From Pecten maximus (Eukaryota): a DNA stretch of 64,000 bases. The position numbers were made by a program, and so were the translations under genes. Below are positions 22,060 to 50,275 of this stretch, one piece after another. Where the stretch lies: the NCBI RefSeq assembly GCF_902652985.1, contig NC_047015.1, forward strand, positions 43,028,001 through 43,092,000, read 5' to 3'. The notes beneath the pieces are model-generated. The model was not told the DNA's origin. It ran no database searches and saw only the letters and a list, made by a program, of their open reading frames with translations. How positions within the stretch are numbered: position 1 is the stretch's first letter; each line of letters opens with the position of its first letter.

Positions 22060-22633
22060 GGCGCTGTTGACGGAGAAGTAATGTTTTCGGCGCTGTTGAC
22101 GGAGAAGTAATGTGCTCGGCACTGTTGACGGAGAAGTAATGTTCTCGGCGCTGTTGACGTAGAAGTAATGTTCTCGGCGCTGTTGACGGAGAAGTAGTGT
22201 TCTCGGCACTGTTGACGTAGAAGTAATATTCTCGGCGCTATTGGCGGAGAAGTAATGTTCTCGGCACTGTTGACGGAGAAGTAATGTTCTCGGCGCTGTT
22301 GACGGAGAAGTAATGTTCTCGGCGCTGTTGACGGAGAAGTAATGTTCTCGGCGCTGTTGACGGAGAAGTAATGTTCTCGGCACTGTTGACGGAGAAGTAG
22401 TGTTCTCGGCACTGTTGACGGAGAAGTGATGTTCTCGACGCTGTTGACGGAGAAGTAGTGTTCTCGGCACTGTTGACGGAGAAGTGATGTTCTCGGCACT
22501 GTTGACGGAGAAGTAATGTTCTCGGCACTGTTGACGGAGAAGTGATGTTCTCGGCGCTGTTGACGGAGAAGTAATGTTCTCGGCGCTGTTGACGGAGAAG
22601 TAATGTTCTCGGCGCTGTTGACGGAGAAGTAAT
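22060..22633. repeat. 29-bp minisatellite, ~20 copies
   Basis: Unit GGCGCTGTTGACGGAGAAGTAATGTTCTC, head to tail, with no spacers. Confidence 0.95.
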
Positions 22634-23003
22634 GCGCCCATCCTTTTGAAGCACTTGGTTTTATTCTCATCTTACATTTTTTTTTGGGGGGGGGGGGGGG
22701 GGGGGGGGTGTCTCAAAAACCCAGGATTCCGTTTATCTTCTTTATTCCAATTCAAGTTCTTTTCCGTTGTATACTATGGTTACACTGATGAAATATTTAA
22801 GACTGTATAAAATGTACAAACAATTGTTCGAATCAGAAAGGGAAACCAATTTCCCCCTTAGCCACAGTGGGACAACAGGAAAAGAATACCGAAATGTAAA
22901 CGGAATTGTAATTTTCATTCAAAATCAGCAAAGCGATGACAAAATAACTGATTGACTGAGCCCAAGACAAGGTGTACCGGCATGGTAAACGTCTTATACA
23001 TTA

Positions 23004-24360
23004 TCGACGACACTCACCATACAAATCTAGGTGACGACGACACTCACCATACAAATCTAGGTGACGACGACACTCACCATACAAATCTAGGCCACGACGA
23101 CACTCACCATACAAATCTAGGTCAAATCGACGGCACTCACCATACAAATCTAGGTCACGACGACACTCACCATACAAATCTAGGTCACAATGGCACTAAC
23201 CATACAAATCTAGGTCACGACGGCACTCACCCTACAAATCTAGGTCACGACGGCACTCACCATCCAAATCTAGATCACGACGACACTCACCATACAATCT
23301 AGGTCAAATCGACGACACTCGCCATACAAATCTAGGTCAAATCGACGAAACTCACAATACAAATCTAGGTCACGACGACACTCACCATACACATCTAGGT
23401 CAAATGGACGATACTCGCCATACAAATTAGGTTAAATCGACGACACTCACCATCCAAATCTAGGTTCCGACAACACTCACCATACAAATCTAGGTCACGG
23501 CCACATTCACCATACAAATCTAGGTCACGACGACACTCACCATACAAATCTAGGTCACGACGACGCTCACCATACAAATCTAGGTCACGACGACACTCAC
23601 CATACAAATCTAGGTCACGACGACACTCACCATACAAATCTAGGTCACGACGACACTCACCATACAAATCTAGGTCAAATCGACGGCACTCACCATACAA
23701 ATCTAAGTCACGACGACACTCACCATACAAATCTAGGTCACAATGGCACTAACCATACAAATCTAGGTCACGACGGCACTCACCCTACAAATCTAGGTCA
23801 CGACGGCACTCACCCTACAAATCTAGATCACGACGACACTCACCATACAATCTAGGTCAAATCGACGACACTCACCATACAAATCTAGGTCAAATCGACG
23901 AAACTCACAATACAAATCTAGGTCACGACGACACTCACCATACACATCTAGGTCAAATCGACGATACTCGCCATACAAATTAGGTTAAATCGACGACACT
24001 CACCATCCAAATCTAGGTCCCGACAACACTCACCATACAAATCTAGGTCACGGCGACATTCACCATACAAATCTAGGTCACGACGACACTCACCATACAA
24101 ATCTAGGTCACGACGACACTCACCATACAAATCTAGGTCACGACGACACTCACCATACAAATCTAGGTCACGACGACACTCACATACAAATCTAGGTCAC
24201 GACGACACTCACCATACAAATCTAGGTCACGACGACGCTCACCATACAAATCTAGGTCACGACGACACTCACCGTACAAATCTAGGTCACGACGACACTC
24301 ACCATACAAATCAAGGTCACGACGACACTCACCATGCAAATTTAGGTCACGACGATACTC
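23004..24360. repeat. 30-bp minisatellite (~45 copies) with a 553-bp higher-order duplication
   Basis: Unit CACGACGACACTCACCATACAAATCTAGGT. The rare variant CACAATGGCACTAAC recurs at 23186 and 23739. Confidence 0.95.
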
Positions 24361-28646: not shown

Positions 28647-30273
28647 GGTTTCTTATTGGTGATACAGCATTTGCACACTTACATTGTTACACATTATAGT
28701 CTCCCTTTTTGAGAGTTTTTAGGAAATAATATTTATCCTTAAATAAGTCAAAAGCTATGTAGCTCTTCTCATGAATGTGTGCAAATGTAGCTCCCTCTTT
28801 GCTTTGTTGTGAAAATAATATAAATATATATACATGTAAACTGTATGAATGAGTCTGTAGAATGAATGTTTCTTCTTTTTTTTTATATATATAAAACGGG
28901 TAAATGGGACGAAATGAAATTGAACGTTTGAAAGATGTGAAAGAGACCTCCTGTGAGAGGCTTCATGTTGTAACAGGGGTGAACCCCTGGTCCCAACCCT
29001 GTCTTCCCAACTTTGCTGGGATAATGAAATTCAATTTGAAACCGAAAAAGACCTGAAGTCTAGAGGTGCGGGCTGGCAAAAAAGAGCACAGGATATTTAT
29101 TTTCCATCCCAATCGGGCTAGATTATTTATTTTCAGTCAAAGCAAGGTCAAGATATTTATTTTCATATTGCTTTGATAAAACCAGTATTAAAGTGATATA
29201 TTTTCCCCAAATTGTGACTGAAATAGTTTCCTCGTGTGTGATTGAATACAGCTCCGGGACCTGCTGTAGGATTATGACAACAGGTTTTGGGTTTCAATTA
29301 CATGTACTACCAAATCGGCAGAGAGAAATTACATATTATAGTGTGACTAAAGGTGGGGTCAACATATGAACTATAATCACATAAATGACTAGTTATTATC
29401 AATTCTGATTGTGTTAGTGGAATCCCTGCATAACCCCAAGTTGAGTGAAGGGGGTACCCTAATAAAATGATAAAAAAATTTAACAGGCTAAATTCTTTTT
29501 TTTTTTTTTAATCAATTGCAATACTTAACACTGTATGCAAAATTTCACAAAAATTTTAATGTATACAACCTTGCCAACTAGAATGATTGTAGTTGTAATC
29601 ACAGTCTACATTTTATACTTCTAAAATCCATATATATGTACTTTCTACAAAATTAATTTAAGAAATTTCAAAACCGGAAAATTACTTTTTAGCATGTCAA
29701 ACATGTCACTTATTATAGTGAAGGAAAGATATTAAACAGCGTTATCACAATTGGACCAGTACTGTATTCACTGTATAGCGAAATGCATTATCATTTGAAA
29801 ATAAAATGTAGCTTTGAATTAAATAAAAATGTATTGCATCAATACTACACAAAAGAATAGGACGCAAGTTATCACAACTTATTAATGTCCTCTCCACAAT
29901 ACAATTATACATGTGTAAAACTTAGCAATGGCCTGCACCATGCCGTACAAATTTCATATAGCATAAATAAAGCAGAACAGGAAAGAAGCAAAGGAGTAAA
30001 AGAAAGAAAGAGAAGCAAAGGGATAAAAGAAAGAAAGAAAGAAATATGCTGATAAATTAAATAGGAAACAGGAAACTTTTACTGACCATAATGTTCTTTT
30101 CATTGAAATCAAAAACGACAACCATAATATATTGAAACAGTTGTAAAACTTAAAAAAAAACTCTCTATAAGGGTTAAATGAACAAAGTATTACAGTGATT
30201 GGCACACTGCAGAAACAACAAGTTATGTAACGTACATAACAGATTGTACATTTTCACATTACAGATTTTCGCC

Positions 30274-33200
30274 ATGTCCATCGTTACCTGCTTGTGTTTG
30301 TGTGGTTTCCTGGGAGTTCTGGTGTCAGCTTTACCGGTACAACAACAGTCTGTCGCGGACTGGGTAGATCCAGGTAAACTATTATCATGTTTTATAAAAT
30401 ACTTTCTTAGTAGCTGAAACACAACTGAGATACTACCGATTGATCAGTACAATTATATGCATACTTAGAATTACTAATTTTCATGTTTTTTTCTGAGTTT
30501 TTAAAAAAAAATTTTTTTTTTTTTTTTTTTTTTTTTGTCATGATGCCATTGAAAGAACTCATCAATGAACCATAGCCCTATTAGACTGAACCTTACAATG
30601 TGCTTAATTCCTGCAATATTATCGTGTTATCGAAAATAAACACAAAAATCCATGGTATGCACTTTTTGAAAAAGAAACCCGACATTTTAAAATATATGTG
30701 AGGGCATACTATGAATTCGCAGTTTATATCGTTATGGCTTTTTTTAATGAAAGAAAAAAGTAAAACAATCAATTTTAACGAAGTACAAACGTTGCTTCCT
30801 TATACGATATTGACGTGCCCTTTGATTTGACCGTTTATGACCTCATTAGCAGTGAAGTAACACACAAGGAAGCGAGCATAATTGATTACCTAATAAATCA
30901 ATAAGTCAAAATGACATTAATTATTGGCAAAATCTTGCTCATTTTATTATTTATATTATAGAATAGACTGTGAACAGCTTCTAACACTGAATCACATGTT
31001 TATGGGACGGAGTGAATGAACTTTGACATCAAGCACACGTCAGTCCCGCACGTGTTCTATGTAGATTGTATTCGGTGTGTTATTTATCACCGGTTATATC
31101 ATCCTCCAATTAAAAAAAAACTTACGTACTAATGTTTACTTAAAAAATAATTAAGTAAATACCCGTCAATAACTGTTACAATGACGTTTACCACCCCCCC
31201 CCCCCCCCCCCCCCCCCCCCTCAAACAAACAAACAAAACAGAAAGAAAACCGAAGATATATAAAATAAGACTTTATGTAGACTATGTGAACTTACCTGCT
31301 AATTTCCCGATAATCGCCCTGTCTGTTTCTCGCTGTCATCCTGATACATTGCAAGGTGTGTGTGATAACTTCTGATGGAATATACACTGTGGGATACTAG
31401 GCTTATGCTGTATATTATTAGAAAATTTTCGTCATAATGTGCGCGGTACCCATTTCTACATGACCCTCTTCAACAGGGTCCTTTGAGGGACACCTTGTAT
31501 ATACATGTATATAAAAGTCTATTAATATTTCTGGGGTGCCATTATGAGATGTTCTTTGAGATATCCTGTTTTCATTTCAGTTGCTGAGGCACCAGGCCAG
31601 AGCTTCATTCCCAAACCAGATGGACAGCAAAATCAAAACCGCGTGTCACAAGCAACTTCAGTTGGGAAAAGAAATCTGAGACGCATTGGTTTCCAAAACA
31701 GTAACAATATCTTTTTCCGTGATCAACCAATGTCTGTACTTGGATCAGATGGTCAAATGTACTACGTCGGTAGCCAGCTTAGTCCAGCTAAGACTTCTCA
31801 ACAAGCCTCGTCTGACGGATATGCTATCTCTGCCACAGATAATTCAGTCCCACAGCCAACACTCGGATTCGGAACCCAGCCAGAATCCGCGCTCTCACTC
31901 TCAGGACAGCCGAGTCACGCAGAATCTAGTCCATCCCAGGCCAAGTTAGAAGCCGAGATACAGGCCATGAGGGCCGATCTTCTTGTAGATCCAACACTGC
32001 CCAATATCTTACCAACTGACTCCGTTCTTACAATGAATACCGATGTAACAAATAGTGAAGACAATTATAATGATGATTCAGATAACGAAGATGATGACGA
32101 TGAAAATGATGAAGATGACGACGAAAGTGACGAAGATGATGACGGAAATGATGGAGAGGATGACGATACAAATGATGAAGATGATGACGATACAAATAAC
32201 GAAGTTGATGATGATGTAAACAATGACGATGATGACGATACAAATGATGACAATGATGACGATACAAATAACGAAGTTGATGATGATGTAAACAATGACG
32301 ATGATGACGATACAAATGATGACGATGATGACGATACAAATAACGAAGTTGATGATGATGTAAACAATGACGATGATGACGATACAAATGATGACGATAC
32401 AAATGATGAAGATGATGACGATACAAATAACGAAGTTGATGATGTAAACAATGACGATGATGACGATACAAATGATGACGATACAAATGATGAAGATGAT
32501 GACGATACAAATAACGAAGTTGATGATGTAAACAATGACGATGATGACGATACAAATGATGACGATACAAATGATGAAGATGATGACGATACAAATAACG
32601 AAGTTGATGATGATGTAAACAATGACGATGATGACGATACAAATGATGATACTGATGGCGCAAATGATGAAGATGGCGACGATGTAGACGACAATGATGA
32701 CAATGCAGCTGATGACGTTGATAACGAGGACAGTTTCAATACAAATGATGAAGATGATGAAGACGTCAATGATAATGCCGATGACTTTAACGGTGACAAC
32801 GATGTTGAAGATGGTGACGATTTAGCTGAAGACGTAGATGATAATAATGCAAATGATGAGGACGAAAATGATGTAACTGATGATGAGGATGAAAATGATC
32901 AAAACAATGACGACATAGAAAACGAAGATGATGATGATGCAACTGACAATGGTGATATAGATAACGGTGACGAAGACGATTCAGACAACAATCAATACGA
33001 CGATATCGAAGAAGCTGATACTGATGCCGATAATGACAATGAACATGACGACAATGATGGAGATGGAGAGGAAATAGAACCTTTTGATGATAAAGATGAA
33101 GAGAATGAAGAGGATGAAGAGGAGGTTGAAGATGATATCGACGACTCTATAGAAAATGACATTGATGGCGAATCAATGACAGATGACAGTGCTGAAGAAA

Positions 33201-33584
33201 ACACCGCTTTTGTTGACGATAGCATAGACGACAGTAATTATGATGACGGTTTAATTTCTATGGAACAAGAGAGCGAAGACGACGATAATGAAAATCAATC
33301 GAATGAAATCTCTGTGAACGGTGTCGAAGATGAAGATTTACAATCAAATGAGTTAAATGAATTAGACGACGCGGACGCGGACGCGGACGCGGACGTAGAT
33401 GATGGCACCACAAGTGCGGAATTAATACCAGAGGATACCGACGACAACGATGATGACGATATATCAGAGGATACCGACGACAATGACGCTGACGATGATG
33501 ATATACCAGAGGATACCGTTGATGACGACGATGATGATGACGATGATGATATGCCAGAGGATACCGTTGATGACGACGACGATA

Positions 33585-33634
<50 letters not shown>

Positions 33635-33674
33635 GAAGAAGACGACGACGACGACAATTTACCATTAAATACAT
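30274..33674 (+). CDS. Secreted, extremely Asp/Glu/Asn-rich protein (candidate Aspein/Asprich-type acidic shell-matrix protein); 3' end lost in the gap
   Basis: Exon 30274-30373 encodes MSIVTCLCLCGFLGVLVSA/LPVQQQSVADWVDP (hydrophobic signal peptide) and ends at CAG|GTAAAC, phase 1. The acceptor TTTCAG ending at 31580 joins in frame to a >2 kb open exon 31581-33674. An acidic domain of ~540 residues contains only one Lys and one His. Confidence 0.85.
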
Positions 33675-34174
33675 NNNNNNNNNNNNNNNNNNNNNNNNNN
33701 NNNNNNNNNNNNNNNNNNNNNNNNNNNNNNNNNNNNNNNNNNNNNNNNNNNNNNNNNNNNNNNNNNNNNNNNNNNNNNNNNNNNNNNNNNNNNNNNNNNN
33801 NNNNNNNNNNNNNNNNNNNNNNNNNNNNNNNNNNNNNNNNNNNNNNNNNNNNNNNNNNNNNNNNNNNNNNNNNNNNNNNNNNNNNNNNNNNNNNNNNNNN
33901 NNNNNNNNNNNNNNNNNNNNNNNNNNNNNNNNNNNNNNNNNNNNNNNNNNNNNNNNNNNNNNNNNNNNNNNNNNNNNNNNNNNNNNNNNNNNNNNNNNNN
34001 NNNNNNNNNNNNNNNNNNNNNNNNNNNNNNNNNNNNNNNNNNNNNNNNNNNNNNNNNNNNNNNNNNNNNNNNNNNNNNNNNNNNNNNNNNNNNNNNNNNN
34101 NNNNNNNNNNNNNNNNNNNNNNNNNNNNNNNNNNNNNNNNNNNNNNNNNNNNNNNNNNNNNNNNNNNNNNNNNN
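33675..34174. other. Assembly gap (500 N, probably a placeholder size)
   Basis: Run of N. It must hide the end of the Asp-rich gene and the first LRRC45 exons. Confidence 1.
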
Positions 34175-34385
34175 ACAGCCTCAGTAGACCCTTGACAGTA
34201 TAGGTATACAGGACATTCAGTAGACCCTTGACAGTATAGGTATACAGGACATTCAGTAGACCCTTGACAGTATAGGTATACAGGGCATTCAGTAGACCCT
34301 TGACAGTATAGGTATACAGGTCATTCAGTAGACCCTTGACAGTATGGATATACAGGGCATTCAGTAGACCCTTGAGAGTATGTTT
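34175..34385. repeat. 36-bp tandem repeat (~5-6 copies) next to the gap
   Basis: Unit CATTCAGTAGACCCTTGACAGTATAGGTATACAGG(A/G). Confidence 0.9.
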
Positions 34386-34677: not shown

Positions 34678-37600
34678 GGAAACAACATCCGAGGAACAGG
34701 TGTGGACTTCCTGGGAAAGATGTTACGACATAATCATACTCTTCTTAGGTATGGACAATGACTACAACGCCTTCTTCTTCCCACATTAAAATGGTGCATT
34801 GGTCGAAGTATAGGTGAACTTGGTACAGTCCAAACTTTTATAATTGAATTAGATAACTGTACATGATAACATTGCACATGATGTTAGATGTCATGTAGTA
34901 TACAGTGTTTATTGTATGTTTGACTAATTAACTGGTCAAGTGTTGTTTTCTGTACACAGCTTGTGTCTGGAATGGAATGCTCTGGGGATGTTGGATGACT
35001 CCTTTGCTCTGTTTTGTGAGGGAGTAGGTTCCAATGATTGTCTCCAGGCTCTAGACATTAGGAACAACCAGATCAACCACGACGGAGCTGCAGAACTGGC
35101 TGCGGGACTCAAGAGGAACAGTACACTGAGATCTCTAGGTAAGGTCACATGACCTATGTGTATGTATTTCTGTGTAATTTTGTAAATTTATTATCTAGTT
35201 GGAATTTTATGTAATAATCAAGCAGGAACTTGTCAGTTTACTTTAATTTCTTGAGGTCAGTATTAATTTTATTTCAATGATTTGTGTACAAACGATTATT
35301 TTTTGTCTCTGGACTTTGACCATCAACAGATTCTTTACAGATTTATAAAATGGAGTGTGTTCAATTAAATACATGTATATACACAACTGAATAACTACTG
35401 TATGTTAAGGCATGTTATAAATACCATACTCGACCTAGTGATTTGATTGGCTATTTCATTATATATTATTATTTTAAAATCTGTTTTGAATTACACAAGC
35501 TGTACTTAATTTGTTATATGTGTAGTTTATCAATTAGTGTAAATTTGTGATTCAGATTTACGATGGAACAGTATCGGACTGCTGGGAGGTCGTGCTCTAC
35601 TGGAAATGTTACAGACCAACAAAACATTATGTAGGATGGAGCTAGCCGGCAACAATATTCCTGTGGATATCTTAAAGTCTATTGGTAAGGTACCACTCCA
35701 GGTCAGAACAGTGACAGGATGAGGTCATTTACAGCTAACAGATCATAATAAAATCACTTAAAAAAGGAGTAGTGCAGTTAAAGAAATTATAGAATCTGAA
35801 GATCAAACAAAATGATCTGCTTTTTCCTGATTTTACAGATTTTACAACTCTGATATTTTCTTTGGTTTCTTCATTTTCCTATCAACATTCTAGGTTAATT
35901 ACTGATATTCCAAGTGTGTTGTGTTACAGAGACGGCCATTAGTCAGAACGAGGACCGTGCCCTAGTAACAGGAGAGTACAGTAAGAAGATTACACTCATG
36001 TCTAAACACATGAAACAGATGGAGCATGATAAGTCGTTACAGGTAGGAAAACAGCCATCTTTAGGCAGGTAAAAACATGTACCAGGTATTAAAGACAACA
36101 TTATCGCAAGTTAATACAGGTAAAAACATGTACAAGGCATTAAAGATAACATTATCGCAAGTTAATACAGGTAAATGTATGACCCAATAACATTTGATCT
36201 TGGAGAATAACTTATGTAAAAGCACATACTAAAATAGTTACATGTAATTGTTTTAGGAAAAATGCGACAAATCCACCATGAAAAACATGATGTTTTTTCG
36301 AGGGGAAAGAAAAAATGCGTTGTTCATGTAGCTTACCATCTGTTATTATTAGAAATTATTTTGAATCAAATTTGTTCAATTTCATAAACCCCAAATCCTC
36401 TTTTTTCCCCTTGTTGTCTCAGATGGGTGACCTTATGGATACCATAGACAAACAAGAAGAACTGCTGCGCCGATCCAAAAGGTAAAACAAAAATGATACC
36501 CAGTTACTCTGGTAGGTTACATACCAGTAAACAGCCTACCAGTGCATGCCTACCTATTCTATAAATCAAACCAGATTGCCTCAATAGACCAGTACAAGTA
36601 TGGATATTTATGAAATTTGTTATTTTGTACATTAATTTGTGTTCTCATAACAATAAATGTAGTATATAAGTGGAAAACCGTAAAAATGGAAAAATTCTCA
36701 GCTGGTTACATAGTACATGTACGTTGTTTGTACTGTATACAGATATATAAAAGAAACTAAAATGTATCTAACAAATTATTAAGAATTTATATATTTTGTA
36801 AATTAGTTTCTTTTACATATATATTGGGTTTAGATTACCAGTAGGTTTGTGATGACTGAAACAAGTACACAGCATGTCTATTTGGTGTTTAACACTAAAC
36901 AGAGGTGTATACTATATATTGATGAGGTGACCGAAATATATAAAATTCTTATGTTAATGAGAAAAACCCACACAAGGTAAAACATATTGAAATCATGATT
37001 TAAAATATTAGAAATGATCTATGCTATATTTGTAAAGTTAATTGGTTTTGTTAAACAGGTCAGCTACTGATAAAATCACCAATCTACAAGGAGCTCTGGA
37101 AGAGAGGAAGTCTTCCTTTAACTCTGTAGCTTCTAAGTAAGTACTAAAATATACCACACTTCCACTGATACTATACTTTGACCTTACTGTACAGTAGTGT
37201 ATTGTATTATACTATCCTTTCACTATACATGTCAAACCGCAGCCTCCCAAAACACACATACGCACTCACAACACGCATGCATGTCGCACGCACAGGAGGC
37301 CGTCCTTAAATGACCTTAGCTGTTAATAGGACGTTAAACAAAATAAACCACTATACATGTATATTGTATATATATGTTCACTTATCCCATACTTCCATTT
37401 ATAATATACTTTCACATATAGCATACTTCTAATTTTACAATTTTGCTATACTTCCCCTGCTATTCTACTTTCACTTGATAAAAAAGGGTATAATTTACTG
37501 AAGTAGCACTTTTAAACTGATAATATTCTACTGTTTATATACCCGGGTACTTACAATTATCATGTTTTATTTACACCTACTTGTAAATATGATTATAATT

Positions 37601-45307: not shown

Positions 45308-48300
45308 TCATAGTCCATTGTACATACTGTAACACTGTGGGTGGTACTTGTGTGGCCCAGTGTCCTGTAAAACACCAGAGGGCGAACAGATCCAGGGGTC
45401 AAAGGTTATATTCTGCCACATATTTAACTGGTGCTGCAGCTGATGATAAACCTTTGCGTGACTTGGATCATAAGCTAGATTTTGGAGTTCTTTCGGGTCA
45501 TTCACTATGTTAAAAAGCTCCCACTGGTCTCTGTAGTAATAGTTATGAAGAGTTTTATACCAGTGTGTGTCTTCTCCTCGCCGTGTTCTGTTCAGTAGGT
45601 CCTGGAATGTTCTTGAAATGAAAAAATCTTGATCTATTGAAAACGGCATTTGAAAGTTAATGTTCTGGATGAGTTTATATTGTTTGTTTCTCACCACCCT
45701 CATTGGGTAATACATTGTTACCTCATGAAGACTATGGCTGGCGTACACAGTATCCCATGATTCCTTTGGTTCTTCCTCTAGCAACGGAAGTAAAGATTTT
45801 CCGGTTAAGGTCACATGATTTCTGAGGATCTTGTAGTGAGGATATTTGACACCAAACCAGTCAAGCACTGTCGGCAGAATGTCCACATGACTCAACATAG
45901 CATCACTTCTCTGAAATCACAAAATTATTTTCAAATGTATCCATACAAAAAAAAAATATTTCAATTAAAATCTCCCGATTGCCCCCAATTAGTGAAATTA
46001 TTTAGTCTGCAGGAGAAATGTTTAAAATTGTTCACCCACCTGTCCCCAGCGCTTGCTATGGTACGGTGAAGACAAGATGAACGGTTCAGCCAAACCGGAG
46101 TCGTACAAGTTGGTACGGCCATTTGGGAAAGGAATGCCGTTGTCAGAGGAGTACATGACCAGGGTGTCATCTGCGTGGCCTGCTAACTCCAGCTCCTTCA
46201 GTATAAGGCCTATACCTTAAAGTACAACATAGAAACAAAGAATGATATGTTTGGAATATATGTACAGTACTTTTTTTCATGGACATTATAACTTATACCT
46301 GTTGTAACTCATATTCTGCTATGTTGTATATATGGAGTTTTAACAGATGTGCTGTTGTCCTATAATCATGGAGTCTTAACTGATAAAGTATTATTCTATG
46401 ACTATCCTCATTGTTTACCTTGGTCCATACGATTGATAGTGGTATACTGGGCAGCTATGTCCAGTCTGGCCGCCGGAGTGTCCTGCACAAAATAGGGAAC
46501 TACCACAGATGCTGGGTCAAATATTACAGGCTTCCAATCGGGCATAGTCCCATCAGCGCCAAACTTCTCACAGAACTGTCCGTACTGGGGATGAGTGTGG
46601 CCACATCGATGGGGATCATGGAATGCCACATACAGAAAAAATGGACTGGAATATATAGATTTTGGATTAGTTAATTTATAAAAAATTAATGGGAAACAAA
46701 GCATCAAAATTGATACAAATCCCCTCCCTCCCACTTAAACCACCTGATCAAAAGGAGACAGGCATTTATGTAAACAAAACAGATTTTGAGCTTGACACTA
46801 AAAATCTGAAAATCAAACTAAAATGAATTAATACTCTATATTTCTCTAATGTTCAACAAAATCAGAAATCATGACAGTGTGTGACTTAAATTGCTTTCAA
46901 TAGTAATGATGACCTTGACCCTGATTAATCACAGAACCTCCATCAATAACCAGTTATACAGTATACATATAGATTAAATAGAGCAAGGAAATTCAGGTAA
47001 TTTTCATTTTATGATATTTGTTTGTTATATAAGGAAACTTTCACCTGGAAGAATTCTGCTGCAGGAATTCACGGACATGTTGTCGAATAAAGGTGATATT
47101 TCTTCCTGTTTGTAGAATACTGTGGCCATCAAGTTCAGTGACAGAGTAATCAAATGGGTATACCGACTCTGGCCCAATATTCTTCTTACCAATGATACCT
47201 GTCAATTATAACAAATGTCAATATTGTTCTATATCAAAAGCAAGTAATACTGAGGTGGCTGTGTTTTGACATTTGTCTATAATCATTTTTGTACTGACAC
47301 CTGTCTCTTGTCTTACCTGTTCTGACACCTGTCTCATGATTCCTGTCTCCTTTCTTACCTGTTCTGACACCTGTCTCCTGATCTACCTATTCTGACACCT
47401 GTCTCCTGATCTACCTATTCTGACACCTGTCTCCTGATCTACCTGTTCTGACACCTGTCTCCTGATCTACCTATTCTGACACCTGTCTCCTGATCTACCT
47501 ATTCTGACACCTGTCTCCTGATCTACATATTCTGACACCTGTCTCCTGATCTACTTTTTTTTGACACCTGTCTCCTGATCTACCTATTCTGACACCTGTC
47601 TCCTGATCTACCTTTTCTGACACCTGTCTCCTGATCTACCTGTTCTGACACCTGTCTCCTGATCTACATATTCTGACACCTGTCTTCCGATCTACCTATT
47701 CTGACATCCGTCTCCTGATCTAATTATTCTGACACTGTCTCCTAGCGGTCCTTCTTTTTTGACACCAGTCTCTCGATCTACCTTTTCTGACACCTGTCTC
47801 CTGATCCACCTACATTTATGTATTCGGACACGGTCTCTTGATCTGCATTTTCTGACACCTATATCCTGATCTACCTATTCTGACACCTGTCTCCTGATCT
47901 ACATATTCTGACACCTGTCTCCTGATCTACCTATTCCGACACTGCCTCCTAGATGTCTTACCATTTTTGACATCTGTCTCCTGATCTACCTGTTCTGACA
48001 CCTGTCTCCTGATCTACCTGTTCGGACACCTGTCTCCTGATCTACCTATTCTGACACCTGTCTCTTAGCTGATGTCTTACCTTTTTTGACACATGTCTTA
48101 CGATTCCTGTCCTATTTGTCTTACCTGTTCGGACACCTGCCCCCTGACGATTCCTGTCCTATATGTCTTACCTGTTCGGACACCTGCCCCCTGACGATTC
48201 CTGTCCTATATGTCTTACCTGTTCGGACACCTGCCCCCTATATGTCTTACCTGTTCGGACACCTGCCCCCTGAGGATTCCTGTCCTATATGTCTTACCTG

Positions 48301-50275
48301 TTCGGACACCTGCCCCCTATTTGTCTTACCTGTTCGGACACCTGCCCCCTGAGGATTCCTGTCCTATTTGTCTTACCTGTTCGGACACCTGCCCCCTGAC
48401 GATTCCTGTCCTATATGTCTTACCTGTTCGGACACCTGCCCCCTGACGATTCCTGTCCTATATATCTTACCTGTTCGGACACCTGCCCCCTATTTGTCTT
48501 ACCTGTTCGGACACCTGCCCCCTGAGGATTCCTGTCCTATATGTCTTACCTGTTCGGACCCCTGCCCCCTATTTGTCTTACCTGTTCGGACACCTGCCCC
48601 CTGAGGATTCCTGTCCTATTTGTCTTACCTGTTCGGACACCTGCCCCCTTCAGCAGCGATGGTAGACTTGTGACCTCTTCAAATGACTGAAAGTGGTGGT
48701 AGCCATTGAACAGTCCATACATTCCATTTTGGTGCTGTGGTAACCCTGACAACACAACTGACCTGGAAACATCATATAAGGCTATTTACACATGATAACT
48801 AGAATCAACCTGAATGTTGTGAGAGTGGATATCCTACCCGAAGACTAAAGGAGAATTCCTGCTAGCCTGGTATTGGAACCATCATACCTAATTGTGTGAA
48901 AACTGAATATTGATTACAATTAAAGAATTAATAACAAGGTTTTATAAAATATGAGATAGGTTTCAGACACAAACATCAGGTGATAATTAACCTCTCGAGT
49001 AGGATTTAAATAACACCAGATACTTTGATGTCTAATAATATGTATGATACAATAACATCATGTACAAAATTTAATGTGCAATATACCTGCTAGGGGAACA
49101 ACTGCTCACTGATGTAAATGCATTGTTGAAAACCAAGCTCCTCTGTGCTAACTTGTTCAGGTTTGGTGTCTTACAAATGTCATTGTTGTACACCTGTGTT
49201 TCAAATCCAGCATCATCCCCTAAAACAGAATGAATAACTAGAAAATGTCTGTAAGACATCAATGTCCCATTCCCACTTGACACTCTAAAACACAGTTTGG
49301 TGAGGATCGCCTCAGCAGTTCCTGATATTAGCTAGTTACATACAATGGGGACGGAACGGGACGTCATTTCATGGCAGGGGCATAAAAATATCAAATACAT
49401 GCACAGCTGTTCATGTGTAATAGGAAGGAGTAATCAAAAATAGCCTGCCTGTGGTGGGGCTTGAACTAGCGACCCTTTCCTCTCAAGGCAACTCAAGGCA
49501 AAATATGTGTTGAAACATCTTAATTACCACTAGGTTAAACGGAAATTATCACTAGCCTGAGCTAATAAGGTGACATTATACTCTCAATTTTTACACTACT
49601 CCCTCCTTCACAAAGTCTTCGCACCAAAACCCAGGGTTCATTTGCTCAAAGGAAGCCTTTCAATCTCCATAGCTTTCCCTTGAAGTGGTTTAAGGGAAAT
49701 TAATATTTAGTAATCTGAGCTAGTAAGGTGGCCTATACCCTTAACTTATACATATGTACAACCCCCTCCCCAAATGTTTATTCACAGTCTCACTGACCCT
49801 CCAATCCAAGCTTTTAAAATATGTTTCACACCGTTTGGACCAAATCCATGGCAGTTATTCTTCAATCTTACAAAAAATGCAGATTTTATAGAATTGCTTT
49901 GTTTCTTTTAAGTTACTTACAAATTACTTACCTTTTTCAACTGTATGAACACTATGTAAATACTAAAGGCAACGAATGGACACACTGTTGACTGATTTAT
50001 TAATTCATATACTTATGATAATCTGGGAAGTCAAAGTGAAACTGAAACCTGATGAAAAACATCAAGAACCGGATATCGATTTTGACGATAACTAGTGACA
50101 TCCTAGCCTATACAGGTACGTTTTTAGAAAACACAGGACAGAATGGCAACTTACCAAGTATTAGCAGGACGTTCCTAGGTTGTGCTGGGTATATTAATGT
50201 ACTTATACCGAGAAAAACTGTGAAAATGACATTTGCAAACATTTCTGGACTGATATGTCTTGTGATCAAAACCAT
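45308..50275 (-). CDS. SGSH: N-sulphoglucosamine sulphohydrolase (sulfamidase), 7 coding exons, ~515 aa
   Basis: Exons (-): 50275-50155, 49219-49087, 48762-48629, 47198-47045, 46645-46419, 46215-46040, 45910-45308 (1548 nt). There is a signal-like N-terminus, then [26 protein letters not shown] (formylglycine motif), [57 protein letters not shown] and FPFSIDQDF-like. A possible second start ATG lies at 50242. Confidence 0.96.
47294..48649. repeat. Composite minisatellite filling SGSH intron 3: 47/32-bp units near exon 3 grading into 28-bp units
   Basis: Units CCTGTTCGGACACCTGCCCCCTGAGGATTCCTGTCCTATTTGTCTTA (47 bp), CCTGTTCGGACACCTGCCCCCTATTTGTCTTA (32 bp) and TCTGACACCTGTCTCCTGATCTACCTAT (28 bp). 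The first unit overlaps the coding end of exon 3. Confidence 0.95.

What the first reader, a model, noticed from the sequence alone, without database searches (positions are those of the whole stretch)
30274..33674. Secreted hyper-acidic (Asp/Asn/Glu) protein: candidate lineage-specific shell-matrix protein
Seen: a signal-peptide exon ending ..VSA/LPV splices in phase to a large exon. That exon encodes ~150 non-acidic residues (with GKRNLRR, a possible convertase site), then ~540 residues dominated by D, E, N and T with one K, one H and no R or C. The acidic part is modular: six DDDTNNEVDDDVNN blocks spaced 72, 72, 87, 84 and 84 nt apart (all multiples of 3), a DADADADAD run, four (I/M)PEDT-poly-D blocks and a final poly-D. 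Mixed GAT/GAC codons and frame-preserving repeat lengths indicate selection at the protein level. Known: signal peptide plus poly-Asp describes the bivalve calcite-associated Aspein/Asprich proteins, whose repeats are D/S/G-type rather than D/T/N/V-type. Inference: a new Ca2+-binding biomineralisation protein sitting between conserved housekeeping genes. The ORF track misses its true N-terminus.
Basis: partly seen in the sequence, partly recalled or inferred. Interest (0 to 1): 0.8.

Follow-up and report, generated by a model that had tools for sequence, protein, structure and literature searches.

The report
Scallop-only secreted hyper-acidic protein gene
This is a real two-exon king-scallop gene, with a known relative only in the Yesso scallop, for a secreted, unstructured protein whose tail is nearly half aspartate and was recently enlarged by in-frame tandem duplication. 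It looks like a calcium- or shell-mineral-binding protein, but that role could not be tested here.

Summary
Exon 1 (30274-30373) encodes a signal peptide and joins in phase, across a canonical 1207-nt intron, to exon 2 (from 31581). Exon 2 is open for 697 codons: 157 non-acidic residues, then 540 residues with D 46%, N 15%, E 12%, one K, one H and no R or C.

The C-terminus and stop codon are therefore unknown.

The gene model is supported from outside this genome. The only true relative among 1.8 billion protein representatives is an uncharacterised 194-aa Yesso scallop protein, OWF52091.1. It carries the same signal peptide, the same exon junction, a conserved 42-residue core and two shared islands in the tail. 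Searched back against the 918-Mb genome, it hits only these two exons.

The gene is single-copy, has no Pfam or PDB match, and its N-part is predicted to be mostly disordered. The six repeat blocks are identical at DNA level, so they are a young coding minisatellite rather than evidence of codon-level selection.

A shell-matrix role is plausible by analogy with Aspein-type proteins, at roughly 0.4.

The scan has no earlier follow-up of this stretch.

The parts
30166..30171 (+). TATAAG, a TATA-box-like element 108 nt upstream of the ATG (candidate core promoter)
   Evidence: Read directly from the sequence. Its function is inferred. A possible acceptor (..cattacag|) at 30264 means a non-coding upstream exon cannot be excluded.
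30274..30373 (+). Coding exon 1: start codon in a GCCATGT context, a 20-residue signal peptide (30274-30333, predicted cleavage VSA|LPV), and the first 13 mature residues. It ends in phase 1 at an AG|GTAAAC donor.
   Evidence: It is 70% identical (E 9e-14) to residues 1-33 of Yesso scallop OWF52091.1. It is the only place in the 918-Mb genome that matches those residues. It is the only signal-peptide-plus-donor ORF in the window.
30374..31580 (+). Intron of 1207 nt, GT..AG, with a pyrimidine tract before the acceptor. It contains poly-T and poly-C runs.
   Evidence: The junction DWVDP|V is contiguous in the ortholog's protein.
31581..32053 (+). Exon 2, non-acidic N-part: 157 residues, S/Q/P/A-rich, no Cys.
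   Evidence: No Pfam match and no PDB match. The AlphaFold2 single-sequence model has mean pLDDT 54. Only a hairpin at residues 50-62 and a helix at 117-133 are predicted.
31667..31792 (+). Conserved core: exon-2 residues 29-70, from K-R-N-L-R-R-I-G-F to Q-L-S-P-A-K, including the conserved dibasic RR.
   Evidence: 31 of these 42 positions are invariant between king and Yesso scallop (invariant-column list). phmmer E 1.3e-15.
32054..33674 (+). Exon 2, hyper-acidic part: 540 residues, cut off by the assembly gap. Calculated net charge for exon 2 is about -317 at pH 7.5 and calculated pI is about 2.3.
   Evidence: No significant protein relative.
32183..32653 (+). Coding minisatellite: six units of 72-87 nt, each beginning DDDTNNEVDD.
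   Evidence: TRF reports period 84 with 97% matches. The units are identical at DNA level except for 3-nt and 15-nt indels and their ends.
33335..33466 (+). Tail islands shared with the ortholog: D-L-Q-S-N-E-L-N, the DADADADAD run (33368-33394), and A-D-V-D-..-T-S-A-E-L-I-P-E-D-T.
   Evidence: BLASTP against P0001 gives 14 of 24 identities (E 5e-5) and 7 of 8 identities.
33425..33674 (+). Four (I/M)(P/S)EDT-plus-poly-D blocks, a 15-residue Asp run, and the last readable residues before the gap.
33675..34174 (.). 500-N assembly gap that hides the 3' end of the gene.

Best explanation
Shown:
- This is a genuine, single-copy, two-exon gene of the king scallop, with its one known ortholog in the Yesso scallop.
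- It encodes a protein with an N-terminal signal peptide, a short conserved N-terminal module and a very long polyanionic tail. The module comprises the mature N-terminus LPVQQQSVxDWVDPV and a 42-residue core around a conserved RR.
- The tail is at least 540 residues, 46% Asp, with essentially no basic residues and no Cys.
- The tail is much longer than in the Yesso scallop model. Part of it is a young in-frame minisatellite, so it grows by tandem duplication.

Inferred:
- The protein enters the secretory pathway and is released as an intrinsically disordered polyanion.
- Its carboxylate-dense tail binds Ca2+ with high capacity and low affinity, or adsorbs to CaCO3.
- The conserved N-module provides a specific contact or a processing site.
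- The most likely site of action is the extrapallial space and the calcitic shell matrix. There it would concentrate Ca2+ or stabilise amorphous precursors and modulate calcite growth, as proposed for Aspein.
For: Gene reality and model:
- The frame is open for 697 codons, against 44 or more stops in every dinucleotide shuffle.
- Splice sites are canonical and in phase.
- This is the only signal-peptide-plus-donor ORF in 128 kb of scanned sequence.
- The ortholog P0001 = OWF52091.1 matches exon 1 at 70% identity (E 9e-14). The alignment of exon 2 with it shows the conserved core (46% identity to the query).
- The reciprocal search of the whole genome returns only these two exons.

Secretion:
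- The hydrophobic core has a best 12-residue Kyte-Doolittle mean of 2.76, followed by V-S-A. It is conserved in the ortholog.
- No ER-retention motif is seen at the end of the ortholog model.

Disorder and polyanion:
- Composition and charge, no domain match, and pLDDT 54.

Expansion:
- Repeat units are identical at DNA level.
- Tail islands that are adjacent to the N-part in the 194-aa ortholog lie about 450 residues further downstream here.

Analogy:
- Aspein is a secreted, Asp-dominated, disordered protein of a calcitic layer that selects calcite in vitro (bioRxiv 10.64898/2026.06.03.729799, read).
- Scallop shells are mainly foliated calcite (my own knowledge).
Against: - There is no expression, tissue or proteomic evidence of any kind.
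- The protein, its ortholog's accessions and its tryptic peptides appear in no searched paper or held supplement.
- The C-terminus lies in a gap, so a retention signal, a membrane anchor or further domains cannot be excluded.
- The composition is D/N/E/T/V. That differs from Aspein (D/S/G) and from the known scallop acidic protein MSP-1 (S/G/D).
- The signal peptide was judged by simple rules, not by a trained predictor. The ortholog's -1 residue (Thr) is less typical.
- The ortholog is itself only a genome-annotation model.
Confidence: 0.42

Rival explanations
1. The protein acts inside the secretory pathway. It would be a granin-like or calsequestrin-like luminal Ca2+ buffer, or a precursor cleaved at the conserved RR to release a conserved N-terminal or core peptide, with the acidic tail serving as spacer or sorting domain. 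It would not be built into the shell.
For: It combines a signal peptide with a conserved dibasic RR immediately before the most conserved segment. The mature N-terminus is highly conserved. Acidic, Cys-free, disordered proteins with dibasic sites describe granins and prohormone spacers (my own knowledge).
Against: The G-K-R amidation-type site of king scallop is H-K-N in Yesso scallop. Only one dibasic site is conserved. The ortholog's peptides are absent from the text and held supplements of the Yesso scallop neuropeptide inventory PMC5996578. A spacer of 540 or more residues would be unusually long. No thioredoxin-like calsequestrin domains were found.
Confidence: 0.2
2. It is a secreted polyanion with another extracellular role, such as a component of mucus, byssus or adhesive, egg or sperm coat, hinge ligament or statolith, or metal chelation. 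The acidic tail would act as a hydrated or cation-binding polymer unrelated to shell calcite.
For: The same structural evidence applies: signal peptide, disorder and charge. Nothing ties the gene to the mantle. The rapid change in tail length between genera is typical of many secreted low-complexity proteins.
Against: No positive evidence exists for any of these tissues. Among bivalve secreted proteins, Asp-dominated Cys-free sequences are mostly known from shell matrices (literature read, and my own knowledge).
Confidence: 0.25
3. It is not a secreted protein gene. Either translation starts at the internal ATG at 31544 and gives a cytosolic or nuclear acidic protein, or the open frame is a by-product of a GAT-rich microsatellite.
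For: GAT-type microsatellites that read as poly-Asp are common in this genome: 59 DNA-level matches, of which the sampled ones are plain poly-D runs. An ATG lies at 31544.
Against: Those microsatellite loci have open frames of only 80-300 codons, with no gene-like flanks. Here 697 codons are open, including 157 non-repetitive residues conserved in another genus. Exon 1 and the exon junction are conserved in the ortholog. The sequence before 31581 is a typical pyrimidine tract plus AG.
Confidence: 0.06

Closest known systems
OWF52091.1 / A0A210QTL9, hypothetical protein KP79_PYT06239 of Mizuhopecten yessoensis (194 aa, uncharacterised)
   Same: A true ortholog. It shares the signal peptide, the mature N-terminus, the exon junction, the 42-residue core with RR, and two tail islands.
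   Different: Its acidic tail is about 60 residues, against at least 540 here. It lacks about 65 residues of the S/Q/P-rich segment and the predicted helix of the king scallop N-part. It has HKN where king scallop has GKR. It may be a truncated model.
Aspein (Pinctada fucata), an unusually acidic shell matrix protein of the calcitic prismatic layer
   Same: Signal peptide, Asp-dominated low-complexity sequence, extreme calculated pI, expected intrinsic disorder, and lineage restriction. This matches how the protein would work if it is a shell protein.
   Different: Aspein is 60.4% Asp, 1.5% Glu, 13.2% Ser and 16.0% Gly. This tail is 46% Asp, 12% Glu, 15% Asn, 3% Ser and 2.6% Gly. No significant sequence similarity to any protein of 383-1220 aa was found. 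This protein has a conserved non-acidic N-module of about 170 residues. Aspein's mantle-edge expression and in-vitro activity are demonstrated, and neither is known here.
Asprich family (Atrina rigida), Asp-rich prismatic-layer proteins
   Same: Secreted, Asp/Glu-rich and modular acidic domains, including DA-type repeats. A DADADADAD run occurs here too.
   Different: No homology was tested directly, because Asprich lengths lie outside the searched length range. The composition and the N-module differ. This comparison rests on my own knowledge of the family.
MSP-1, the acidic glycoprotein of scallop foliated calcite (Sarashina and Endo; from my own knowledge)
   Same: Same animal group and a secreted acidic matrix protein with tandem modules.
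   Different: MSP-1 is Ser/Gly/Asp-rich with SG, D and K domains. Here Ser and Gly are each about 3%, and basic residues are virtually absent. No paralog of this gene exists in the genome.
Coral acid-rich proteins (CARPs/SAARPs), and vertebrate phosphophoryn and calsequestrin, as functional analogues (from my own knowledge)
   Same: High-capacity, low-affinity Ca2+ binding by dense carboxylates. A non-acidic conserved part is joined to Asp-rich stretches.
   Different: These are unrelated sequences. Calsequestrin's thioredoxin-like domains are absent. Phosphophoryn depends on phospho-Ser, which is scarce here.

Membership tests
OWF52091.1-like scallop orphan family (defined here from the two known members) | N-terminal signal peptide followed by LPVQQQSVxDWVDPV, with the intron after DWVDP | tested here: met
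   Exon 1 is 70% identical over 33 residues, E 9e-14. The reciprocal genome search finds only this exon.
OWF52091.1-like scallop orphan family (defined here from the two known members) | Conserved core from NLRRIGF to QLSPAK | tested here: met
   phmmer E 1.3e-15. The invariant columns are listed.
OWF52091.1-like scallop orphan family (defined here from the two known members) | Acidic tail carrying the SAEL(I/L)PExT and D(L/V)QSNELN islands | tested here: met
Aspein/Asprich-type unusually acidic shell matrix proteins | Signal peptide | tested here: met
   A rule-based reading (hydrophobic core, V-S-A cleavage motif) and conservation. No trained predictor was available, and the joined protein was not sent to any tool.
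Aspein/Asprich-type unusually acidic shell matrix proteins | Asp-dominated sequence with Ser/Gly (Aspein) or Asp/Glu/Ala (Asprich) repeat chemistry | tested here: not met
   The tail is Asp-dominated at 46%, but the partners are Asn, Glu, Thr and Val. Ser is 3% and Gly is 2.6% (against the Aspein figures).
Aspein/Asprich-type unusually acidic shell matrix proteins | Sequence homology to family members | tested here: inconclusive
   No protein of 383-1220 aa scored E <= 0.001 against the acidic part. Only the 8000 candidates sharing most words were scored, and I did not verify that Aspein was among them. Asprich lengths fall outside the range.
Aspein/Asprich-type unusually acidic shell matrix proteins | Expression in shell-secreting mantle epithelium and presence in the calcitic shell layer | not testable with these tools
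No shell-proteome supplement was held as text.
MSP-1-type scallop acidic glycoproteins | Ser/Gly/Asp-rich tandem SG-D-K domain modules | tested here: not met
   The composition does not fit: S 17, G 14 and K 1 out of 540 residues. The family definition is from my own knowledge.
Neuropeptide or prohormone precursors | Conserved mono- or dibasic cleavage sites flanking conserved peptides, often with a Gly amidation donor | tested here: inconclusive
   The RR is conserved, but G-K-R is not (H-K-N in the ortholog). The protein is absent from the Yesso scallop neuropeptide paper and its held supplements.
Calsequestrin-type luminal Ca2+ buffers | Thioredoxin-like domains plus an acidic C-terminal tail | tested here: not met
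   No Pfam domain was found at E <= 1. The N-part is predicted to be disordered.

The most novel reading that the evidence does not exclude
This is a scallop-specific counterpart of Aspein, evolved independently. A conserved N-terminal module would dock, or be processed, in the extrapallial matrix. A polyanionic Asp/Asn tail would control foliated-calcite formation. The tail's length would be set by an unstable coding minisatellite, so it would differ between species and possibly between individuals. That would make tail length a heritable, rapidly evolving tuning knob for shell mineralisation.
Probability: 0.2. Interest if true: 0.65.

Novelty: new member of a known kind. Interest (0 to 1): 0.48.

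Why it matters
Unusually acidic, Asp-rich secreted proteins are thought to be the key controllers of calcite formation in bivalve shells. Molecularly they are known mainly from pearl oysters and pen shells. For scallops, which build foliated calcite, the known acidic protein (MSP-1) is of a different chemical type.

A scallop-restricted protein with a calculated net charge near -317 and a conserved non-acidic handle would be a concrete, testable candidate for that role. Its tryptic N-part makes it detectable by ordinary proteomics.

It also shows how such proteins arise and grow. GAT-type microsatellites are common in this genome, and a coding minisatellite inside this gene has recently multiplied in frame.

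On the practical side, the locus ends in an assembly gap. No matching king scallop protein appeared in the collections searched, so it may be unannotated and may need a corrected gene model.

Tried and rejected
- **Joined protein.** The exons were searched separately by reference. The join was made only in a local script, to check phase and length. No signal-peptide predictor was run on the joined sequence.
- **Word search, N-part** (length range 383-1220 aa): nothing, not even a king scallop self-hit.
- **Word search with P0001** (107-340 aa): only itself.
- **Word search, acidic part**: nothing.
- **Bacterial hits P0002 and P0003** from the exhaustive search. I rejected them as pseudo-replication. 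Each near-identical bacterial repeat gives only about 30 bits (35% identity over 62 residues), and the scores add up over 10-20 copies.
- **Domain and structure searches.** Pfam, PDB sequences and the ESM Atlas gave nothing. AlphaFold2 gave no fold worth searching.
- **Ortholog contig.** The look-up of encoding contigs had no record for P0001, so synteny in the Yesso scallop could not be checked.
- **Literature.** There were no hits for the accessions, the locus tag or five diagnostic peptides. Nothing was found in the Yesso neuropeptide paper. No usable supplement was held for the king scallop shell-proteome papers. One search found no paper, and searches listed none on an Asp-rich scallop shell protein.
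- **CK2-type sites.** 22 of the 30 tail Thr residues have Asp or Glu at +3. With 58% Asp+Glu this is close to what composition alone predicts, so I make no phosphorylation claim.
- **Minus-strand genes.** Ser-rich and His-rich frames exist on the minus strand, but they are broken by 11-21 stops, so I rejected them.
Full report
**What is in the sequence**

The window is a 36% GC animal sequence. Earlier notes of this scan name the genome as the king scallop. It is placed at C1:43,028,001-43,092,000 of a 918-Mb assembly.

At 30274 an ATG in a GCCATGT context opens a 100-nt coding exon. The exon ends at a canonical AG|GTAAAC donor at 30373/30374. After 1207 nt, a pyrimidine tract and an AG lead into a second exon at 31581. 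The split codon (G + TT) reads Val, so the two exons join in phase. Exon 1 encodes 20 residues with a 15-residue uncharged hydrophobic core followed by V-S-A, then 13 further residues.

Counted from its first full codon at 31583, exon 2 is open for 697 codons.
- The first 157 residues are S/Q/P/A-rich and non-acidic.
- The next 540 residues contain D 249, N 80, E 65, T 30, K 1, H 1, R 0 and C 0.

There are two small corrections: two of the six blocks have one Asp fewer, and one of the four xPEDT blocks is ISEDT. The calculated net charge of exon 2 at pH 7.5 is about -317, and its calculated pI is about 2.3.

The stop codon and C-terminus are therefore unknown. The protein has at least 731 residues.

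**Is it more than chance?**

The coding frame has no stop in 697 codons. In 300 dinucleotide-preserving shuffles the mean was 66 stops and the minimum 44. The other two + frames have 29 and 202 stops, and the three minus frames have 11-21.

I also scanned the whole window on both strands for ATG-started ORFs that combine a signal-peptide-like hydrophobic core with an AG|GTRA donor. That scan returns exactly one ORF, the one at 30274.

**Is the gene model right?**

I did not resend it. The support therefore comes from comparison with another species.

An exhaustive HMMER search of 1.84 billion protein representatives with the 157-residue N-part found three proteins. Two are giant bacterial repeat proteins. 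Each of their near-identical repeats scores only about 30 bits, and the totals merely add up over 10-20 copies. I reject these as spurious.

The third, P0001, is OWF52091.1 / A0A210QTL9, a 194-aa 'hypothetical protein KP79_PYT06239' of the Yesso scallop, *Mizuhopecten yessoensis*.
- Its first 33 residues match exon 1 at 70% identity (E 9e-14), including the whole mature N-terminus LPVQQQSVxDWVDP.
- Its residue 34 is the Val of the split codon.
- The protein then continues into the equivalent of exon 2.

The reverse search of P0001 against the entire king scallop genome returns only two places. One is 31598-31885 (E 8e-18). The other is 30274-30375, matching query residues 1-34 (E 1.1e-5). Exon 1, the junction and exon 2 therefore belong together, and the internal ATG at 31544 offered by the ORF list is not the start.

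A TATAAG sits 108 nt upstream of the ATG. A possible acceptor just before the ATG leaves room for an upstream non-coding exon.

The exons were searched separately by reference, and the joined step, including any signal-peptide predictor, was left out.

**What kind of protein is it?**

The N-part has no Pfam family, no PDB relative and no usable ESM Atlas neighbour. A single-sequence AlphaFold2 model is mostly disordered, with mean pLDDT 54. It shows only a short hairpin (residues 50-62, block pLDDT 84) and one helix (117-133).

Conservation with the Yesso scallop is concentrated in three places.
- The mature N-terminus.
- A 42-residue core from K-R-N-L-R-R-I-G-F to Q-L-S-P-A-K. The hairpin lies inside it, and 31 of its 42 positions are invariant.
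- Two islands in the tail, SAEL(I/L)PExT and D(L/V)QSNELN.

The 'GKRNLRR' convertase idea is only half supported. The RR is conserved, but GKR is HKN in the ortholog.

The acidic part has no significant relative in the PDB, among proteins of 383-1220 aa, or elsewhere in the same genome at protein level. The N-part is also single-copy.

**How the tail was built**

The six DDDTNNEVDD units are identical at the DNA level. They differ only by one 3-nt indel, one 15-nt indel and their last few bases. They are a young coding minisatellite. Their GAT/GAC mixture has simply been copied, so it is not independent evidence of selection on the protein. What does argue for protein-level constraint is this:
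- Every indel is a multiple of three.
- About 240 residues of non-repetitive tail (32651-33367) keep the same acidic, base-free composition.
- The tail islands are conserved across genera.

In the Yesso scallop model the tail islands follow the N-part closely. Here they lie about 450 residues further downstream. Either the king scallop tail expanded or the Yesso model is truncated.

At DNA level the array matches 59 places in the genome at 64-100% identity, several of them at this locus itself. In the 14 other loci I fetched, the acid-rich frames are plain (GAT)n-type microsatellites. Their open frames are 80-300 codons, with no gene-like flanks, and the rest show no acidic frame at all. They are not paralogs. 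They do show that raw material for poly-Asp coding sequence is abundant in this genome, and that a poly-Asp frame alone would not prove a gene.

**Most likely mechanism**

The shown steps are these: a conserved signal peptide, a conserved short N-module, a very long disordered polyanionic tail, single-copy status, restriction to scallops as far as the databases reach, and tail growth by in-frame duplication.

The rest is inferred. The protein would be exported, and its dense carboxylates would bind Ca2+ with high capacity or adsorb to CaCO3. The N-module would supply a specific contact or a cleavage site.

Among bivalve proteins the best functional analogue is Aspein. It is a secreted, Asp-dominated, presumably disordered protein of a calcitic layer that favours calcite in vitro (bioRxiv 10.64898/2026.06.03.729799). 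Scallop shells are largely foliated calcite (my own knowledge). The high Asp:Glu ratio here, about 3.8:1, fits the Asp bias that paper associates with calcitic layers.

I put the shell-matrix or extrapallial reading at about 0.4. The rivals are:
- a luminal Ca2+ buffer, granin-like protein or RR-processed precursor (0.2);
- another extracellular polyanion role, such as mucus, adhesive or gamete coat (0.25);
- a non-secreted protein or an artefact (0.06).

**Comparison with the known**

By sequence, the gene belongs only to the two-member family defined by OWF52091.1. All three defining features of that family were tested and met.

It is not a member of the Aspein/Asprich family. The repeat chemistry differs (Asn/Glu/Thr/Val partners instead of Ser/Gly), and no homology was detected, although that test was not exhaustive. 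It is not MSP-1-like in composition. It lacks calsequestrin's domains.

It 'works like' an unusually acidic matrix protein only by inference.

**Novelty and verdict**

Lineage-specific, repetitive, acidic secreted proteins are a well-known kind in biomineralising animals, and the ortholog is already deposited as an uncharacterised protein. I therefore rate this a new member of a known kind.

No king scallop protein matching the N-part appeared in either protein collection. This may mean the gene is unannotated, or that records of this genome are withheld. I cannot tell which.

Interest is moderate. It is a concrete and experimentally tractable candidate for the missing Asp-rich calcite protein of scallops, with an unusual conserved handle and an unstable coding minisatellite. 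There is no functional evidence yet.

Noticed in passing
window 34678-36483 (+): A gene with RNI-type leucine-rich repeats followed by coiled-coil exons (LRRC45-like, by my recollection) starts in mid-protein right after the gap. Its first roughly 95 residues were not found anywhere upstream in the window. Its 5' exons may be hidden in the 500-N gap, or the scaffold join may be incomplete. If so, more than the acidic gene's 3' end is missing there.
   Followed up: partly
window 34181-34381: A 36-bp satellite (5.6 copies, 96% matches) abuts the downstream edge of the gap. The upstream edge of the gap is the poly-GAT run of the acidic gene. Both contig ends are repeats, which probably explains the assembly break.
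   Followed up: no
G000, e.g. L004 (C7:41500500-41505500), L005, L006, L008, L009: (GAT)n-type microsatellites that read as 80-300 codons of nearly pure poly-Asp are scattered over many chromosomes. The DNA search gave 59 matches (several at the query locus itself), which the tool describes as a lower bound. They have no gene-like flanks. They are a possible source of acidic coding tails and a trap for ORF-based readers.
   Followed up: partly
window 22060-22634 and 23005-24360: There are two large minisatellites: 29 bp x 19.8 copies (93% matches) and 30 bp x 44 copies (88% matches). They create long spurious open frames on both strands.
   Followed up: no
window 45311-46734 (-): Exons of an N-sulphoglucosamine sulphohydrolase gene (Pfam SGSH_C, E 5e-16) lie on the minus strand. 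This confirms one of the 'housekeeping' neighbours. Another first-stage note concerns its intron at 47294-48649.
   Followed up: partly
window 10597-10750: A second, 154-N gap lies in the window.
   Followed up: no
window 30490-30537 and 31193-31222: The intron of the acidic gene contains a roughly 30-nt poly-T run and a roughly 29-nt poly-C run.
   Followed up: no
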